In this document: positions 35,428 to 61,994 of the stretch, one piece after another
Numbering within the stretch: the stretch's first letter is position 1
Layout: the number at the start of each line of letters is the position of its first letter
Virus record (IMG/VR): IMGVR_UViG_3300024252_000004
Span: 248,001 to 312,000 of that record
Strand: one strand, 5' to 3'
Length of the DNA stretch: 64,000 nt
Program-made: the position numbers and the translations under genes
The notes under the pieces: generated by a model
What the model was told of the DNA's origin: nothing
Database searches by the model: none
The model's input: only the letters and a program-made list of their open reading frames with translations

Positions 35428-36425
35428 ATGCTTACTATTGATCAAGTTAGAAAGCTAAAGCGTGGCGATAAGGTTGTGGATACCTACGGAAAGGTTTATG
35501 ACTTTGGATATATTTCCCAAACGAATGCTGCCGTAGTTTACGATGAAGGCGAATACAATATGCAGGATGCTTCAGCTTTCAGACTACTTTCTGACAAAGA
35601 GGTTTCTGAAAAACCATTCTATAAGCTGAGGATCAAATGATAAACAAAATCGATTTTAGCAAAATCCCTAAAGAAGACCTATCTGTTTACGAACTATGGG
35701 TTGTGGCAACGTGGTCAGGGAATCCTTATACCGATGATCCTGGGAGTTGGTATATTGAAGATGGTCTGTATCTAAAAAAGGAATCCGCCATTCTTGCTGC
35801 CTCAGTAAGGGGCGTCCGTAAGGATCAAGTTATGAGTCTGAGCGATTTCATATCGAAATGCAATAGGGGTTACTAATGGATTTGTGGCTACATCTGATGG
35901 AATGCAGTTACCCGGAGGGTTGCACTTGCGGCACCTCCGCATACAATGCTTTGGCAGAAAAAGTTGCTGAGCAGCAGTCTCTTATGAGAGAAGCTGCCAA
36001 AGCCTTGTCTGACTGGAACAACGGACAAGGGGTGGATGAAGATTTGGAGCTAATAAAGAAGCTTCGAAGTTAAAATGGGCTGCCCAAATTGTGGTGGAGA
36101 ATCATATCTGACGACTTATCGAGCGAGATACCCTCGTGCAGGTAAGAGTCTTTTGGTTAAGTCAAAATGTATGATGTGTTCATCCTGTAGGACCCGGATA
36201 GGTCCTTTCAAATTCTTGACACCAGCGTTGGCAAATGAAAATGATGCTAACGCCGAGATAGAATGGGAAAGAAAATATAATGAGAAGATGCCTCCAGAAT
36301 ATCCGATGGGTCGTATAAGAAAGATTATGCGAACAGAGGAAGGTAAAAGGCGTGTAGCTGAAGCTTTTGGAAAAGCTTTGTACAAAGAAGTAGAGAAAAC
36401 CTCTAAGGAGAGTAAAGATGATTAA
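35428..36425 (+). CDS. Four small hypothetical ORFs
   Basis: ORF track. Confidence 0.55.
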
Positions 36426-36789
36426 TCAGAGCGATGTTGTTGAATACCTAAAGAACGTTAGCGTTATTGAACTTAGAGGTCTTATCGGGACTCTGGAGGA
36501 TGAGCTTGGAGTTAAGATTCCAGAATACACAGCACCTTCTCAGTACGATCTCGGTTTTGGTGGCGGAGAGGTAGAGCAGACCGAGTTTACCGTTGTCCTT
36601 CAGGGCTTTGAGGGTAAGAAGGTTGCACTGATTAAGGTCGTGCGAGCACTTACAGGTCTCGGTCTAAAGGATGCAAAGGTCGCGGTAGAGTCCGCTCCTT
36701 ATGTGATTAAGGAAGGCGTTGATAAGGGCGTAGCAGAAGAGGTTGCCGCTTCTATGAGAGAGGTTGGTGGCTTGGTAGACATTGTATAA
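36418..36789 (+). CDS. rplL: Ribosomal protein bL12 (L7/L12)
   Basis: EQTEFTVVL, KVALIKVVRALTGLGLKDAK, APYVIKEGV. Confidence 0.95.
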   Translation: MINQSDVVEYLKNVSVIELRGLIGTLEDELGVKIPEYTAPSQYDLGFGGGEVEQTEFTVVLQGFEGKKVALIKVVRALTGLGLKDAKVAVESAPYVIKEGVDKGVAEEVAASMREVGGLVDIV

Positions 36790-36983
36790 TGTTGAATGAA
36801 GCCATCGCAGAAGCTCTTGACGCGCCTTATAAACAGGCGCGTCAAGAGGGAGCAGAGGAAGAGAGAAAAAAGATCGCTGACTGGTTGAGAGAAACCAGCA
36901 AGCACAGTAAGATAGCAAGTACCTTGCTGCGATTAATGGCTGATGAAATTGAGTCTGGCGATTATGGCAAGGGTTAACAATTT

Positions 36984-37057
36984 TGGAGATTAGTTTAATC
37001 GTAAAATAGGTGGCTCTGACCCGCCCGTTACTGGTTCAAATCCAGTATCTCCAGCCA
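36984..37057 (+). tRNA. tRNA-Gln(CUG), copy 2 (D-loop lacks GG)
   Basis: TGGAGAT/ATCTCCA acceptor, loop CT-CTG-AC. Confidence 0.8.
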
Positions 37058-37074
37058 TCATCATAGGTGATACA

Positions 37075-37577
37075 ATGAAGATCGATATGGAGATTCTTAA
37101 GAGTCGAGTCAAAGGGACAGTAAACTTTTCTTTTTTCAGAGCAGGACAGCTCTGGTATGTATGTGAGGACGGGTGGGAATTTCCTATTCCTGTCGAAGAT
37201 ACGGGCAATGCACAGGGAAGCTCTCCCACTTTCTCTGCTCAGATGAAGGGCATTTATATGATGCGCTGGGTAAAGAAGGCTATGGAAGCAGAACTACAAA
37301 GGGATAGTGAGTGAGCATTTTTTCTAAAGTTATTGGCGAGAATATCTTTTTTAAACCAGAATTGTATCCGAGCGGAAATTGCTATGCTCATTATCCTTTG
37401 TCAACAAGGGATGTGAGTATTATATTGGAATATGATACGGGAAGATTTATCTATTACAAAATGAGACCAAGTGGATATGTTACAGGTGATCATATTTGTG
37501 CTGGGAAATTTTCGTCATACCTTTCCGAAAAGGAAAAGAAGTCATTTATTGAAATGTTGGAAAAGATCGAATCGTAG
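37075..37577 (+). CDS. Two hypothetical ORFs (37075-37314, 37311-37577)
   Basis: ORF track. Confidence 0.55.
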
Positions 37578-37645
37578 CTCAGTCCGGTAAGAGCACTCGG
37601 CTGATACCCGAGGGGTCGGTAGTTCAAATCTACCCGGTTCGACCA
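37568..37645 (+). tRNA. tRNA-Ile(GAU), canonical body
   Basis: CGAATCG/CGGTTCG acceptor, loop CT-GAT-AC. Confidence 0.88.
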
Positions 37646-37657
37646 TTAAAATGGGAG

Positions 37658-59836: not shown

Positions 59837-59889
59837 TAAGAAGTGTTAAGATGAGTTCAATTAATGTTAATGAATGAGGAAGTTGTAAA

Positions 59890-61691
59890 ATGAATGCTAT
59901 GATTTTGTTCGCTTTGGTCTTTGGTTCTATCGCTAACGCTGAGCCAGAAATTGTATTTGAGCCTGTTTGCGATCGTTTGTTCGCGGAAGACTACCTTGAT
60001 GACAGAGAGAACTGCGAGACTATCTCGTCAGAAGTCGTCAAGTTGGCGCCAGTCGTTACGATTACCTGCCACACAGAGGACTCCAAAATCTCCGTATCTG
60101 GTATACCGAGCGGCTACTTCAAGCAGAACGAAAAGAATATACTGAGGCAAAATAAGGTTCTCTGTCAGGATTCTTGGTTTGCAGTTGTAGAGAGCAAATA
60201 GGCTAACGCCTATGCCCAGGTGGCGGAATTGGTAGACGCGCCAGATTAAGGATCTGGTTCCTGAAACGGAGTGAAGGTTCGATCCCTTTCCTGGGCACCA
60301 TTAAGAAAGATTATAAGAAGGATTAGAAAATGAGTTCCATTAAAGACCTGTTTCCGATTGATGTAGATAATGATGGTGCAGTAATTCGTAATAAGATAAA
60401 CGAACTTCTCATTTCGTTATGTTATACTGAAGATCAGGATATCAAAATCAGATTCTATTCGATGGCGATCATGGCTACCTTCAGAGAGTATGAGATTAAT
60501 GGTCTTGAAGCAGCTTTGAGGCAGCTTGACCAAATGATTGAGAAGCCTGCTCTGAATGACAATTCTGACATAGGATTCCCGGTTAAACTTGAGACAGATG
60601 AGAAGTGGCCGGGCATTTGCAAAAACGATTGCCCATTCGACAGAGAGTGCGCAAATGCAGGAAGCGCTGGAGATTATCGTTCTGAAAGCGGACTGACACC
60701 CGACTTTGTTAAAAACGAAGATTCTTCGATTACCTGTCACGGTTGTGGAGATATGGAGGAAGGTATGAGGCTTTTCGATGACAATGGAAGGCCGACAACT
60801 TTTTATAAGCATTATAATCATTGGTAAAGACATAAGGAGTGAGAGTGAGTGATTCTGTAACGGATTTTATATATGGGTGTGAGTTGCCCTGGAGACATAG
60901 AGATATGGTTTCCGATTTCGTTATGAACGGGGAGGTTGGTTTCGTATCAACCTATACGTCGCACGAAGATATCTTTTGGTTTGGAATAGGATACGCATCA
61001 AATTCTAATGGATTTAATGATGCGCCAGAACCTCCAAGTGCAGAGCTTATGAGTGAAGTAGACTCTGCTTATGAAGAATTGTCAGATGAACTTAAGGAAG
61101 CTTTGAATGGTCGGCCAAGAAATTTGGTACACTCATACGCAGCATGAAAATTTAGGGTATTAGTTTAGTTGGTTAAAACACTGGCTTGTCACGCCAGAGA
61201 TCGCGAGTTCGAGTCTCGTATATCCTGCCATAATATGACTGTAATTTTACGGAGACCTAATGGTTAAAACATTCGAAACTGGAGGATACATTTGGATTTA
61301 TCCAAATGTGGAAATATTGGATAAAGCTTTGAAAAAGCATAATCGGTTGGGCGGTCTTGATACAGGATTTCTCGCCAATTGCAGACCAGATGTAAGCTTA
61401 GCTTATGGCCTTTGGAATGAGAACCTTTACCGATTTGATTGCGAAACGGATCCAGAAGAAAGAATTTATAAGTTTCCAGATACAGAAGTTTCTTTTGTAA
61501 TTCGTATAGGAAGTGATGGCCGACACTATATCACGTCACATAACGGATTAACTTTGGAACAATATGGTGCAATGCTATTGGGCTATTCAACGAAACGGTA
61601 TCTGGAAATGACAGAATCTGAATTTGAAAAAGAGATTGAAAGGCGCAACGAGCCTCCCTCTTCTTCTTTTGAAAACGATTTTCTATTTTAA
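59890..61691 (+). CDS. Hypothetical ORFs (59890-60201 with signal peptide, 60330-60827, 60839-61147, 61260-61691)
   Basis: ORF track. Confidence 0.55.
60214..60300 (+). tRNA. tRNA-Leu(AAG)
   Basis: Loop TT-AAG-GA, variable arm, ACCA end. Confidence 0.9.
61154..61230 (+). tRNA. tRNA-Asp(GUC)
   Basis: Loop TT-GTC-AC, G73-CCA. Confidence 0.92.
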
Positions 61692-61697
61692 AATTAT

Positions 61698-61783
61698 GGG
61701 GGTATCAGGTCTGTTTCAGACCGATTCCGGGCGGCCCACACGATCAGTGGGACGGGTGAGAGGATTGCTCACTGCCCCCGCCA
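61698..61783 (+). ncRNA. 86-nt atypical tRNA-like RNA, twin A
   Basis: GGGGGTA/TGCCCCC acceptor, G-CCA end, T-like arm GTGAG-AGGATTG-CTCAC. Confidence 0.7.
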
Positions 61784-61788
61784 GTTTT

Positions 61789-61874
61789 GGGAATATATAG
61801 GCCAAGGTACAACGGCCGCTTTCAAAGCAGTATTCATGATATCTGCGCAGGAGAATTACCTGCTATTCCCGCCA
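61789..61874 (+). ncRNA. 86-nt atypical tRNA-like RNA, twin B
   Basis: GGGAATA/TATTCCC acceptor, G-CCA end, T-like arm GCAGG-AGAATTA-CCTGC. Confidence 0.7.
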
Positions 61875-61888
61875 GTTAGATTAGTTTT

Positions 61889-61994
61889 GGGGAGTGGGTG
61901 GACTGGTTCGAGTCCAGATAGAAAGGTTATACCCTACCCGCATGGCAAAGGATCGCGCGTCCGACTTTAGGTTCGAATCCTAAACTCTCCACCA
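61889..61994 (+). ncRNA. 106-nt anticodon-less alanine-identity RNA with two T-loops
   Basis: GGGGAGT/ACTCTCC (G3-U70), A73-CCA; TTAGG-TTCGAAT-CCTAA; extra CTGG-TTCGAGT-CCAG. Confidence 0.75.

What the first reader, a model, noticed from the sequence alone, without database searches (positions are those of the whole stretch)
36418..61994. Integrated hypothesis: a phage ribosome-rescue and termination-control system built from RNA mimics and recoded genes
Co-occurring here: a 23S stalk-base mimic with bL12; two alanine-acceptor RNAs without anticodons; two PTH2 enzymes (one UAG-gated); a UGA-frameshift-gated RF1-like factor; an amber suppressor; IF3; deformylase; two SpoT-like HD hydrolases; and an RNA-ligase-like enzyme. 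Inference: a feedback network that senses termination or tRNA stress from host abortive defences, clears stalled ribosomes and suppresses ppGpp. The parts are seen; the wiring is conjecture.
Basis: inference. Interest (0 to 1): 0.8.

Follow-up and report, generated by a model that had tools for sequence, protein, structure and literature searches.

The report
Stop-codon-wired translation genes in huge phage
A 395-kb marine phage carries a real set of translation parts, of which a frameshift-dependent release factor, an amber-interrupted peptidyl-tRNA-hydrolase-like gene with its amber suppressor tRNA, and an RNA that copies the ribosome's L11-binding site are each conserved across many phages, while the single feedback network proposed to unite all parts is not supported.

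Summary
All listed parts exist, but about half lie outside 36418-61994. The window belongs to a 395-kb marine phage contig.

Three parts are conserved, apparently undescribed features.
1. An RF1-type release factor lacks domain 1. Its gene needs a prfB-style +1 frameshift (GGAGG-TCT-CTT-TGA, 40328-40341). The same cassette occurs in 38 unique phage loci.
2. A PTH2-like gene (15074-15451) has an in-frame UAG seven codons after its AUG. 53 of 62 unique relatives share this layout, and 46 of those 53 have a tRNA(CUA) gene within 5 kb. Over 200 cultured mycobacteriophages carry the gene; the two inspected have a start codon, then TAG, before it.
3. A ~280-nt RNA (54912-55193) copies the 23S L11-binding domain, helices 43 and 44, with an inserted helix. 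I found 63 unique copies with strong covariation, including cultured phages GAP32 and pf16.

Two tRNA-like RNAs with alanine identity and no anticodon arm are also real.

Homologs of bL12, deformylase and the SpoT-like hydrolases never lie near these elements in other phages, and IF3 does so rarely. The sensing of host defences and ppGpp control remain conjecture.

The parts
40228..40338 (+). RF1-like release factor, frame-0 part (37 codons, starts MNSIILEIKAAEGG, ends in Leu codon CTT)
   Evidence: It matches RF1 profile positions 105-137. The same short N-terminal ORF is conserved in relatives. A GGAGG lies 8 nt upstream of the ATG.
40328..40342 (+). Programmed +1 frameshift cassette: GGAGG, TCT spacer, CTT TGA G
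   Evidence: The sequence was read directly. 38 unique loci carry CTT followed by a stop: 31 TGA, 6 TAG, 1 TAA. 31 of 38 have an SD-like tetramer within 12 nt upstream. The base after the stop is C in 24. Every locus needing a +1 shift has CTT before the stop, although no CTT was required in that search.
40340..40915 (+). RF1-like release factor, +1 frame part (191 codons plus stop), with the PPT tripeptide and GGQ
   Evidence: NCBIfam scores: prfA 210 bits, prfB 137, PrfH 74. PDB: T. maritima RF1 162 bits, RF2 92, PrfH 50. The Pfam PCRF and RF-1 domains are both matched.
54460..54537 (+). Amber suppressor tRNA, anticodon CUA, CCA encoded
   Evidence: ARAGORN calls it. The Rfam tRNA model gives 54.4 bits.
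15074..15451 (+). PTH2-like gene with an in-frame TAG at 15095-15097. Its ATG overlaps the TGA of the preceding ORF. It lies outside the stated span.
   Evidence: Sequence and translation were read directly. The Pfam PTH2 match (36.2 bits, cut-off 23) starts 6 residues after the TAG. No ATG follows the TAG for 115 codons. The layout is conserved in 53 of 62 unique relatives.
54912..55193 (+). Structured RNA that mimics the 23S GTPase-associated centre. It has a closing helix P1, a helix 43 copy at 54922-54951, an inserted helix of about 214 nt, and a helix 44 loop copy at 55174-55188.
   Evidence: Covariation was measured over 62 unique copies. The minimum-free-energy fold recovers P1 and helix 43.
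54782..54897 (+). Degenerate tRNA-like element (T-arm, 3' acceptor strand, CCA) ending 15 nt upstream of the mimic RNA
   Evidence: It has an orphan T-arm and a G3:A70 mismatch. ARAGORN calls it only at an 85% threshold, as a poor tRNA-Ala.
45817..45924 (+). Alanine-acceptor tRNA-like RNA 1 (alternative 5' end at 45858)
   Evidence: Acceptor GGGGCAG or GGGACAG pairs with CTGTTCC, giving G3:U70, A73 and CCA. It has a T-arm and no anticodon arm. Its 3' 29 nt are 86% identical to the 3' ends of phage tmRNAs in L059 and L061.
61889..61994 (+). Alanine-acceptor tRNA-like RNA 2
   Evidence: Acceptor GGGGAGT pairs with ACTCTCC, giving G3:U70, A73 and CCA, with a T-arm. It shares an AAAG, CGCGCGT, GAC segment before the T-arm with RNA 1.
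36418..36789 (+). Ribosomal protein bL12
   Evidence: TIGR00855 gives 100 bits, cut-off 84.4. No homolog lies near the other elements in other phages.
56522..57007 (+). Initiation factor IF3
   Evidence: TIGR00168 gives 146.8 bits. A contig with no mismatches covers 56707-56893 in a seawater metatranscriptome run.
17196..17588 (+). Canonical PTH2 (outside the stated span)
   Evidence: TIGR00283 gives 111.9 bits, cut-off 82.
23008..23559 (+). Peptide deformylase (outside the stated span)
   Evidence: TIGR00079 gives 110.8 bits, cut-off 103.95.
29272..29802 (+). SpoT/Mesh1-like HD hydrolase (outside the stated span). A second, truncated copy lies at 45-479.
   Evidence: Pfam HD_4 gives 43.3 bits, cut-off 27.2. 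Both copies have the HD..ED motif.
10964..11593 (+). PF09414 RNA-ligase-like enzyme (outside the stated span)
   Evidence: Pfam gives 33.1 bits, cut-off 27. Homologs abut the RF1-like gene in L017/18, L034/35, L041 and L046.

Best explanation
The span is part of the tRNA and translation island of a roughly 395-kb marine huge phage. It is not one demonstrated network. It holds three kinds of things.

(A) A module wired through stop codons.
- A release factor of RF1 type has GGQ and a PxT motif (here PPT) but no domain 1. It can be made full-length only if the ribosome slips +1 at CUU-UGA, helped by an upstream GGAGG, exactly as in bacterial prfB.
- A PTH2-like hydrolase can be made only if a UAG seven codons after its AUG is decoded.
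- The phage supplies a tRNA(CUA) that could decode that UAG.

Shown: the sequence architecture and its conservation and linkage across phages.

Inferred: each protein's output is set by competition at its stop codon. The PTH2-like enzyme would be produced in proportion to amber-suppressor activity. This couples a peptidyl- or aminoacyl-tRNA hydrolase to the readthrough that the suppressor causes. The RF1-type factor would be produced in proportion to failure of RF2 to terminate at UGA. In the six CUU-UAG variants it would instead regulate itself.

(B) Stand-alone structured RNAs in the tRNA array. One is a mimic of the uL11-binding 58-nt domain of 23S rRNA carrying an inserted helix. It most likely binds uL11 or another ligand of that site. 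Two are alanine-identity tRNA-like RNAs resembling the tRNA-like domain of tmRNA.

(C) Ordinary huge-phage auxiliary genes: bL12, IF3, deformylase, alarmone hydrolases, RNA ligase and aminoacyl-tRNA synthetases. I found no evidence of wiring to (A) or (B).
For: Release factor:
- The frameshift cassette was read directly.
- The N-terminal 37 residues are in frame 0 and the rest in frame +1. Both match RF1.
- 38 unique loci share CTT followed by a stop, and 31 have an SD-like tetramer upstream. In 19 the +1 frame is closed within 60 nt upstream, so an independent start for the second part is excluded there.

PTH2-like gene and suppressor:
- 53 of 62 unique loci have an AUG, 0-6 codons, a UAG, then the domain.
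- A recount that includes the window gives 54 such loci; 46 of them have no ATG, GTG or TTG between the UAG and the conserved strand.
- The first upstream in-frame stop is TAG in 59 loci, TGA in 3 and TAA in 1.
- A tRNA(CUA) gene lies on the same strand within 5 kb in 46 of 53 loci with the layout, against 2 of 9 without it.
- No tRNA(CUA) occurs in the tRNA-rich frameshift-type RF loci.

Linkage: the RF1-like gene, PTH2-like gene, tRNA(CUA) and tmRNA lie in one 6.5-kb stretch in L040 and L059.

Mimic RNA: 63 unique copies. P1, the 1058:1080 pair and the base of the inserted helix all covary far beyond shuffled controls.
Against: - No expression, protein or ribosome data exist for this phage. 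The one RNA run found showed only IF3 and one ORF, and no reads on the RNAs.
- An RF1-type factor would oppose the phage's own amber suppressor. It also cannot read the UGA that gates it, although UGA ends 45 of the 102 long ORFs in the window. The purpose of the cross-wiring is therefore unclear.
- In the window the three module parts lie 14-39 kb apart. In relatives they are close together.
- The closest relative (L026) has an uninterrupted RF1-like gene.
- The PTH2-like protein lacks the GK(G)K lysine segment of canonical PTH2, so its substrate is uncertain.
- In cultured mycobacteriophages a GTG with a well-spaced SD follows the TAG directly. Readthrough is not required there.
- The loci counted are related phages, not independent events.
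Confidence: 0.55

Rival explanations
1. There is no circuit. The parts are independently acquired auxiliary translation genes typical of huge phages. The in-frame stops are incidental: local remnants of stop-codon reassignment, or tiny upstream ORFs. On this reading the PTH2-like protein starts at a near-cognate codon (AUU, AUA or GUG) right after the UAG by termination-reinitiation. The tRNA(CUA) would serve general recoding of other genes.
For: - The codon after the UAG is ATT in 28 loci and ATA in 4.
- In mycobacteriophages IkeLoa and Myrna a GTG with an SD 7 nt upstream follows the TAG.
- Thirty RF loci carry in-frame TGA instead of a frameshift, as expected for TGA-reassigned phages.
- Phage suppressor tRNAs and RF1/RF2 are already described as 'code change' genes (10.1101/2021.08.26.457843).
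- bL12, deformylase and the HD hydrolases show no linkage.
Against: - GTT (7), GTA (6) and nine other non-initiator codons also follow the UAG. These include ACA in this window.
- The upstream stop is TAG in 59 of 63 loci.
- tRNA(CUA) is strongly associated with the interrupted form.
- The window uses the standard code and has only this one UAG-interrupted gene.
- The invariant CTT, the SD-like spacing and the weak C context after the stop cannot be explained by reassignment.
Confidence: 0.25
2. All parts, including bL12 with the 23S mimic, IF3, deformylase, the SpoT-like hydrolases and the RNA ligase, form one feedback network. It senses tRNA or termination stress caused by host abortive-infection defences, clears stalled ribosomes and suppresses ppGpp.
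For: - All parts are present in one 64-kb island.
- A core subset is linked in relatives.
- NADAR, macro-domain and NAD-salvage genes in the same window suggest counter-defence content.
Against: - No homolog of bL12, deformylase, the HD hydrolases or the aminoacyl-tRNA synthetases lies in any of 284 neighbourhoods of the RF1-like gene, the PTH2-like gene or the mimic RNA in other phages.
- The mimic RNA and the RF1-like gene share a contig only in this phage.
- No sequence feature links the HD hydrolases to the recoded genes.
Confidence: 0.08
3. The RF1-like factor works like PrfH with RtcB. As a release-factor homolog without domain 1, it would free ribosomes whose RNA has been damaged by a nuclease toxin, and the phage RNA ligase would then repair the RNA.
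For: - The factor lacks domain 1, like PrfH.
- A PF09414 RNA ligase homolog lies directly next to the RF1-like gene in four distinct phages.
Against: - It keeps the RF1 decoding elements (PxT; the acidic GG(D/E)(D/E)A tip) and scores far higher against RF1 (210 bits) than against PrfH (74 bits, below the 166.65 cut-off).
- The ligase is not RtcB, and in this window it lies 29 kb away.
- Adjacency occurs in only 6 of 77 loci.
Confidence: 0.08

Closest known systems
Bacterial prfB (RF2) programmed +1 frameshift autoregulation
   Same: The shift site is CUU-UGA, with an SD-like element 3 nt upstream and usually a C after the stop. Output is set by competition between termination and slippage (the prfB mechanism is from established knowledge).
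   Different: - The gene encodes an RF1-type factor (PxT) that should not read UGA. The loop is therefore cross-wired to RF2 rather than self-regulating, except in the six CUU-UAG variants.
- The site lies at the start of domain 2 (RF1 position about 137), not at codon 26 in domain 1.
- The protein lacks domain 1.
- The carriers are phages.
Phage 'code change module' of suppressor tRNA plus release factor (Borges et al., 10.1101/2021.08.26.457843)
   Same: Phage-encoded suppressor tRNA and RF1 or RF2 are proposed to shift how stop codons are read during infection.
   Different: That paper describes standard-code RF genes in genome-wide recoded gut phages. It mentions neither frameshifting nor a peptidyl-tRNA hydrolase (0 occurrences of 'frameshift' or 'peptidyl'). 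Here the genome uses the standard code, and the regulators themselves carry the in-frame stops.
Recoded release-factor genes of Mimivirus and Megavirus (PMC3521657)
   Same: A virus-encoded release factor. I did not read this paper: that its gene needs recoding (a frameshift and a readthrough) is from my own recall. The search showed only its title, the opening of its abstract, and term counts (two occurrences of 'programmed frameshift', one of 'release factor homolog').
   Different: From my own recall, it is a eukaryotic-type eRF1. Per the abstract, the carriers are giant viruses of amoebae. It has no homology to this factor.
PrfH with RtcB2 (rescue and repair of damaged ribosomes)
   Same: A release-factor homolog without domain 1, sometimes encoded next to an RNA ligase.
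   Different: The phage factor keeps the RF1 codon-reading motifs and scores below the PrfH cut-off. The ligase belongs to PF09414, not the RtcB family.
58-nt GTPase-associated-centre RNA (23S 1051-1108) that binds uL11, and r-protein leader mimics of rRNA sites
   Same: It copies helix 43, the helix 44 loop and the closing helix of the uL11-binding domain. The 1058:1080 pair covaries as it does in rRNA.
   Different: - It is stand-alone and phage-encoded.
- It sits in tRNA arrays rather than upstream of r-protein genes.
- It carries a 60-320-nt helix inserted in the helix 44 bulge.
- It matches no Rfam 15 family other than LSU rRNA itself.
tRNA-like domain of tmRNA (including tag-less mitochondrial tmRNA)
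   Same: G3:U70, A73, CCA and a T-arm. The 3' end resembles phage tmRNAs.
   Different: It has no tag reading frame and no pseudoknots. Neither ARAGORN nor the Rfam tmRNA models detect it.

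Membership tests
Class I release factor RF1 (prfA) | GGQ motif in the peptidyl-tRNA hydrolysis domain | tested here: met
   GPGGQH is present in the +1 frame part. The Pfam RF-1 domain matches at E=3.3e-30.
Class I release factor RF1 (prfA) | PxT tripeptide and best similarity to RF1 rather than RF2 | tested here: met
   The sequence reads RVPPTE. prfA scores 210 bits against 137 for prfB. PDB RF1 scores 162 bits against 92 for RF2.
Class I release factor RF1 (prfA) | Full-length architecture with N-terminal domain 1, and a score above the equivalog cut-off | tested here: not met
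   The alignment covers profile positions 105-335 only. The score of 210 bits is below the cut-offs of 400 and 423. The upstream ORF starts at a Met directly before the EI(R/K)AAEGG segment in relatives as well.
prfB-type programmed +1 frameshift | CUU followed by a stop as the slippery site, with an SD-like element about 3 nt upstream, conserved among homologs | tested here: met
   The window has GGAGG-TCT-CTT-TGA. 38 unique loci share the site and 31 have an SD-like tetramer.
prfB-type programmed +1 frameshift | The stop in the shift site is one that the encoded factor itself reads (autoregulation) | tested here: inconclusive
   The stop is UGA in 31 loci, which an RF1-type factor should not read. 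It is UAG or UAA in 7 loci, which such a factor should read. Codon specificity was not measured.
PrfH (release factor H) | Lacks domain 1, has lost the canonical codon-reading tripeptide, and is paired with RtcB | tested here: not met
   Domain 1 is absent, but PxT is kept. TIGR03072 gives 73.7 bits, cut-off 166.65. No RtcB is present. A PF09414 ligase is adjacent in 4 phages.
PTH2 peptidyl-tRNA hydrolase (the 15074-15451 gene) | Pfam PTH2 score above the gathering cut-off | tested here: met
   36.2 bits against a cut-off of 23. The family profile matches PDB 2zv3 Pth2 at E=6.4e-11.
PTH2 peptidyl-tRNA hydrolase (the 15074-15451 gene) | Conserved G-K-G-K lysine segment and D-A-G aspartate of canonical PTH2 (their catalytic roles are from my own knowledge) | tested here: not met
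   The alignment to 2zv3 shows a two-residue gap at the GKGK segment and R-E-P-D in place of R-D-A-G. No NCBIfam PTH2 model matches.
Amber suppressor tRNA | Cloverleaf with a CUA anticodon | tested here: met
   ARAGORN finds anticodon cta. The Rfam tRNA model gives 54.4 bits. The charged amino acid was not determined.
tmRNA | tRNA-like domain with G3:U70, plus a tag reading frame and pseudoknots | tested here: not met
   Both RNAs have the tRNA-like-domain features. No credible tag frame exists. ARAGORN finds no tmRNA at its default threshold. No Rfam tmRNA match covers either RNA at E<=10.
uL11-binding domain of 23S rRNA (mimic) | Helix 43, the helix 44 loop and the closing helix in the rRNA arrangement | tested here: met
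   It matches LSU model positions 1095-1146. The H44 block GGCGUUAUAGCACAC lies at 55174-55188. Covariation supports the structure. A helix is inserted between the two halves.
uL11-binding domain of 23S rRNA (mimic) | Binds uL11 (or thiostrepton, or translation factors) | not testable with these tools
   This needs binding assays.
bL12, IF3, peptide deformylase | Score above the NCBIfam equivalog cut-off | tested here: met
   bL12 100 against 84.4. IF3 146.8 against 60. Deformylase 110.8 against 103.95.
RelA/SpoT-type (Mesh1-like) alarmone hydrolase | HD_4 domain with the HD..ED motif | tested here: met
   The 29272-29802 protein scores 43.3 bits against HD_4, cut-off 27.2, and has LLHDIVEDTD. 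The copy at 45-479 is truncated and scores 16.1 bits, below the cut-off, but has LHDLVEDYD. Activity on ppGpp was not tested.

The most novel reading that the evidence does not exclude
The 23S mimic RNA may be a phage-made sponge for uL11, or for another ligand of the GTPase-associated centre, acting together with the recoded genes. On this reading, ribosomes depleted of uL11 terminate poorly at UAG through host RF1 and cannot activate RelA. The amber suppressor would then win at UAG, and the stringent response would stay silent. The phage's own RF1-type factor lacks the domain that contacts uL11 and would keep terminating. This would be a new class of viral RNA that reprograms the ribosome by copying one of its RNA domains. 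The roles of uL11 in RF1 function and RelA activation are from my own knowledge, not from a test here.
Probability: 0.1. Interest if true: 0.92.

Novelty: new variant of a known kind. Interest (0 to 1): 0.8.

Why it matters
Phage-encoded tRNAs, release factors and ribosomal proteins are known. How they are controlled is not.

Three concrete, testable features come out of this window.

1. A large family of phage RF1-type factors without domain 1 depends on a prfB-like frameshift. 3,714 protein clusters match at E<=1e-10. This would be a second, independently placed use of that classic sensor, apparently cross-wired to the other release factor.
2. An amber-interrupted PTH2-like gene is paired with an amber suppressor tRNA. 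The gene occurs in more than 200 cultured Mycobacterium smegmatis phages; I inspected two, both with a TAG before the gene and one with the tRNA beside it. The idea that suppressor activity gates a tRNA hydrolase can therefore be tested at the bench directly.
3. A covarying RNA copies the uL11-binding domain of 23S rRNA. It is present but unannotated in cultured jumbo phages such as GAP32 and pf16.

If the recoded genes prove to be regulated as inferred, phages tune host termination through stop-codon competition, not only through wholesale code change. If the RNA binds uL11, phages mimic ribosomal RNA to act on ribosome factors.

Tried and rejected
- A megablast of 20 kb against GenBank phages found nothing.
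- Rfam at gathering and at E<=10 found only tRNAs, plus the local LSU hit. No tmRNA, L10 leader, ROOL or GOLLD model matched.
- ARAGORN at 85% and 70% thresholds produced only noise for tmRNA.
- A DNA pattern built from the two alanine-acceptor RNAs recovered only this phage in IMG/VR. blastn of the non-coding gaps against relatives' loci found nothing except the tmRNA-like 3' end.
- Single-protein IMG/VR scans with bL12 and IF3 returned only this phage, so they gave no co-occurrence data.
- Summing long ORFs under alternative codes did not settle whether the relatives with in-frame TGA are genome-wide TGA-reassigned.
- The RNA-run search found one metatranscriptome. Its reads on 54917-54951 are real 23S rRNA from other organisms, so there is no expression evidence for the mimic RNA.
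- Literature searches for a phage rRNA mimic, a frameshifted phage release factor or an amber-gated hydrolase found no description. The library lacks most subscription journals.
- Rejected: the mimic as a fragment of a real rRNA gene. Only 1 of 50 IMG/VR hits was a true 23S gene.
- Rejected: the mimic as an attachment site or an intron with exon flanks. Its closing helix and the base of its inserted helix covary freely.
- Rejected: the orphan at 4240-4333 as an alanine acceptor. It has A3:U70, G73 and a long variable arm, so it is probably tRNA-Ser(UGA).

Full report
**What the window is.** The 64-kb window has 43% G+C, and nearly all genes are on the + strand. ARAGORN finds 36 tRNA genes. It is identical to part of IMG/VR contig UViG_3300024252_000004, which is 395,127 bp. 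The same sequence occurs in more than 20 seawater or marine metagenome runs. It has no close relative among GenBank phages. The standard code fits. TAG is the rarest stop, ending 17 of 102 long ORFs.

**Inventory.** I ran Pfam and NCBIfam scans of all long ORFs. Inside the stated span they confirm bL12 (36418-36789), a release-factor gene (40228-40915), tRNA(CUA) (54460-54537) and IF3 (56522-57007). The other named proteins are real but lie in the first 36 kb:
- a PTH2-like gene (15074-15451) and a canonical PTH2 (17196-17588);
- deformylase (23008-23559);
- two HD_4 SpoT-like hydrolases (29272-29802, and 45-479, which is cut by the window start);
- a PF09414 RNA ligase (10964-11593).

**The release factor.**
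- An ATG at 40228, with GGAGG 8 nt upstream, opens a 37-codon frame that ends CTT TGA at 40336-40341. The rest of the protein continues in the +1 frame from 40340.
- The site reads GGAGG-TCT-CTT-TGA-G. This is the E. coli prfB cassette: an SD-like element, a 3-nt spacer, then CUU-UGA. The comparison with prfB rests on my own knowledge.
- Both pieces match RF1. The first covers profile positions 105-137 and the second 157-335. RF1 scores 210 bits, RF2 137 and PrfH 74. PDB gives RF1 162 bits, RF2 92 and PrfH 50.
- The protein has GGQ and a PxT tripeptide (PPT) and lacks domain 1.
- In IMG/VR, 79 loci encode relatives at 36-63% identity. Every locus needing a +1 shift has CTT before the stop, although the search did not require CTT.
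- There are 38 unique frameshift loci: 31 with TGA, 6 with TAG and 1 with TAA. 31 have an SD-like tetramer within 12 nt upstream. The base after the stop is C in 24. In 19 the +1 frame is closed within 60 nt upstream, which rules out an independent start there.
- About 30 further loci carry in-frame TGA at or near the same position instead. These may be TGA-reassigned phages, but I could not settle that. Two unique loci have an uninterrupted gene.
- The family is large. 3,714 protein clusters of 105-334 aa match at E<=1e-10. Nearly all of the 120 best hits are 160-230 aa long.
- I found no description of this in the searchable literature. From my own recall, the nearest analogy is the recoded eRF1 of giant viruses (PMC3521657). 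I did not read that paper; one search showed only its title, the start of its abstract and term counts.

**The amber-interrupted PTH2-like gene.**
- Its ATG at 15074 overlaps the TGA of the preceding ORF. Seven codons later comes a TAG (15095-15097). The Pfam PTH2 match begins six residues after that TAG.
- No ATG follows the TAG for 115 codons.
- All nine relatives found next to RF1-like genes have the same layout.
- A profile-based IMG/VR scan found 151 relatives. The best 80 gave 62 unique loci. 53 of them have an AUG, 0-6 further codons, a UAG, then the domain.
- A recount that includes the window gives 54 such loci; 46 of them have no ATG, GTG or TTG between the UAG and the conserved strand. 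The first upstream in-frame stop is TAG in 59 loci, TGA in 3 and TAA in 1.
- 46 of the 53 have a tRNA(CUA) gene within 5 kb, always on the same strand. Only 2 of the 9 loci without the layout have one. The tRNA-rich frameshift-type RF loci have none.
- In L040, L059 and similar loci, the tmRNA, the RF1-like gene, tRNA(CUA) and the interrupted PTH2-like gene lie within 6.5 kb.
- The gene family also occurs in 206 cultured Mycobacterium phages. In IkeLoa the annotated 'peptidyl tRNA hydrolase' is preceded by ATG TAG, and a tRNA(cta) gene follows 250 nt downstream. There, however, a GTG with a well-placed SD follows the TAG, so readthrough is not required.
- The protein diverges from canonical PTH2. 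The GK(G)K lysine segment is deleted and D-A-G is replaced by E-P-D. Its substrate is open.

**The 23S mimic.**
- Window positions 54917-54951 match E. coli 23S positions 1054-1088 at 31 of 35 bases (E=6e-4; the next best hit has E=2.3). The Rfam LSU model aligns 54917-54968 to helices 42-44.
- An exact-pattern scan of IMG/VR found 50 stretches. Nearly all are isolated 30-37-nt matches that always end at position 1088. Only one is a real 23S gene.
- A second conserved block, UUUGGCGUAAUAGCACAC, copies the helix 44 loop. It lies 60-320 nt downstream in almost all copies; the window's version, GGCGUUAUAGCACAC, is at 55174-55188.
- The element therefore has a closing helix, helix 43, an inserted helix, and helix 44.
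- Over 62 unique copies the closing helix is paired in 54-61 sequences with 3-6 pair types, against at most 37-49 in shuffles. The 1058:1080 pair is kept in 61 of 62 with four pair types. The base of the inserted helix is paired in 45-61.
- 27 further copies occur in contigs of bacterial isolates or metagenome-assembled genomes from many phyla.
- Unannotated copies occur in cultured phages. In GAP32 it lies between genes 395 and 396. In pf16 it lies between tRNA-Asn and tRNA-Pro. Sequence hits, whose anatomy I did not check, also fall in unannotated or hypothetical-protein stretches of CBB, Serratia BF, the Erwinia pEa_SNUABM phages and XbC2.
- It sits in tRNA arrays. 19 of 63 copies have a tRNA ending within 100 nt upstream.
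- It has no neighbourhood link to bL12.
- The domain it copies is the minimal uL11-binding RNA (my own knowledge), so uL11 binding is the leading idea. It is untested.

**The alanine-acceptor RNAs.**
- Two orphan T-arms are followed by a 3' acceptor strand, A73 and CCA. Each pairs perfectly with an upstream GGGG... strand and gives G3:U70. They lie at 45817 (or 45858)-45924 and 61889-61994.
- They share a segment before the T-arm. The first resembles the 3' end of phage tmRNAs.
- They lack a tag frame, and no tmRNA model finds them.
- Similar orphans exist in L135, L225, L260 and L269.
- Their function is open. They could be tag-less tmRNA-like RNAs or decoys for AlaRS or EF-Tu.

**The network claim.** Using the window's proteins as probes, I searched 284 neighbourhoods of other phages. 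Homologs of bL12, deformylase, both HD hydrolases, YqeY and the aminoacyl-tRNA synthetases never appear. IF3 appears near the PTH2-like gene in 7 loci. The RF1-like and PTH2-like genes appear together in 11-13 loci. The RNA ligase is near the RF1-like gene in 6. The comparative evidence therefore supports a smaller module: the RF1-like gene, tRNA(CUA), the PTH2-like gene, and sometimes tmRNA or the RNA ligase. It does not support the full network. These counts come from related phages and short neighbourhoods, so they show conserved linkage, not independent co-evolution.

**Mechanism and caveats.**
- Shown: the recoding architectures, their conservation and their linkage.
- Inferred: PTH2-like output follows amber-suppressor activity, and RF1-like output follows failure of termination at the gating stop.
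- Unresolved: why a factor that should read UAA and UAG is gated by UGA; why a phage carries both an amber suppressor and an RF1-type factor; which amino acid the suppressor inserts; and whether the relatives with in-frame TGA use a reassigned code.
- The only transcript evidence is two small contigs without mismatches, in ORF 55612-56007 and in IF3, from one seawater metatranscriptome.

Noticed in passing
window 24232-27105: LysRS (24232-25716) ends in TAG. Three codons later comes a second TAG (25726). An AAA ATPase ORF then continues in the same frame from a GTG at 25729. With amber suppression this would read as one 975-codon frame.
   Followed up: no
window 4240-4333: A 94-nt orphan has acceptor GGAGAGT/ACTCTCC, G73, CCA, a long variable arm and a UUUGAAA loop. 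It is probably a tRNA-Ser(UGA) that ARAGORN and Rfam missed.
   Followed up: partly
window 3423-4226 and 16660-21926: A cluster of NAD and ADP-ribose genes: NAD kinase, a macro domain, NMNAT-Nudix, NAMPT and NADAR. It looks like a counter-defence set against NAD depletion or ADP-ribosylation.
   Followed up: no
window 11590-13230: Four tandem paralogs are made of repeated 'NGTKxWYVNGKLHRLDGPA' units and share a conserved C-terminal tail. Three ORFs in this half of the window match Pfam DUF6745, probably these.
   Followed up: no
window 45900-47094 (- strand) and 4827-5456, 10264-11019: HNH endonuclease genes sit between tRNA genes. Two are on the minus strand, flanking tRNA-Ala, and the stop of one overlaps alanine-acceptor RNA 1. 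Homologs recur in tRNA arrays of other phages.
   Followed up: partly
window 39891-40307 (- strand): A minus-strand ORF with a very acidic C-terminus (ending KEKKEDKDED) overlaps the start of the RF1-like gene. It has no Pfam match.
   Followed up: partly
window 61697-61888: A 190-nt non-coding stretch lies upstream of alanine-acceptor RNA 2. It begins GGGGGTATCAGG, holds a perfect GGTCTG/CAGACC hairpin, and contains two copies of CCCGCCAGTT followed by TTGGG. It could be part of a longer tmRNA-like RNA.
   Followed up: partly
L040, L042, L058, L059 and similar RF loci: In AT-rich relatives the RF1-like gene has two in-frame TGA codons. The first lies near the position of the conserved Trp in E. 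coli RF1 ('ARRW', recalled from memory) and near the frameshift site of the other group. This hints that the frameshift site may have evolved from a reassigned TGA.
   Followed up: partly
about 17 of 62 mimic-RNA copies (e.g. L123, L154, L158, L176, L204): A subset of the mimic RNAs shares a second motif, CACCCCGUAACUGGUAAGG, just before the 3' strand of the inserted helix. The window's copy lacks it, so the family has subtypes.
   Followed up: no
window 52138-54284: An IscU/NifU-like scaffold gene (52138-52536) and a von Willebrand A-domain protein (53052-54284) sit inside the tRNA array. The vWA protein has relatives in many huge phages and crAss-like phages.
   Followed up: partly
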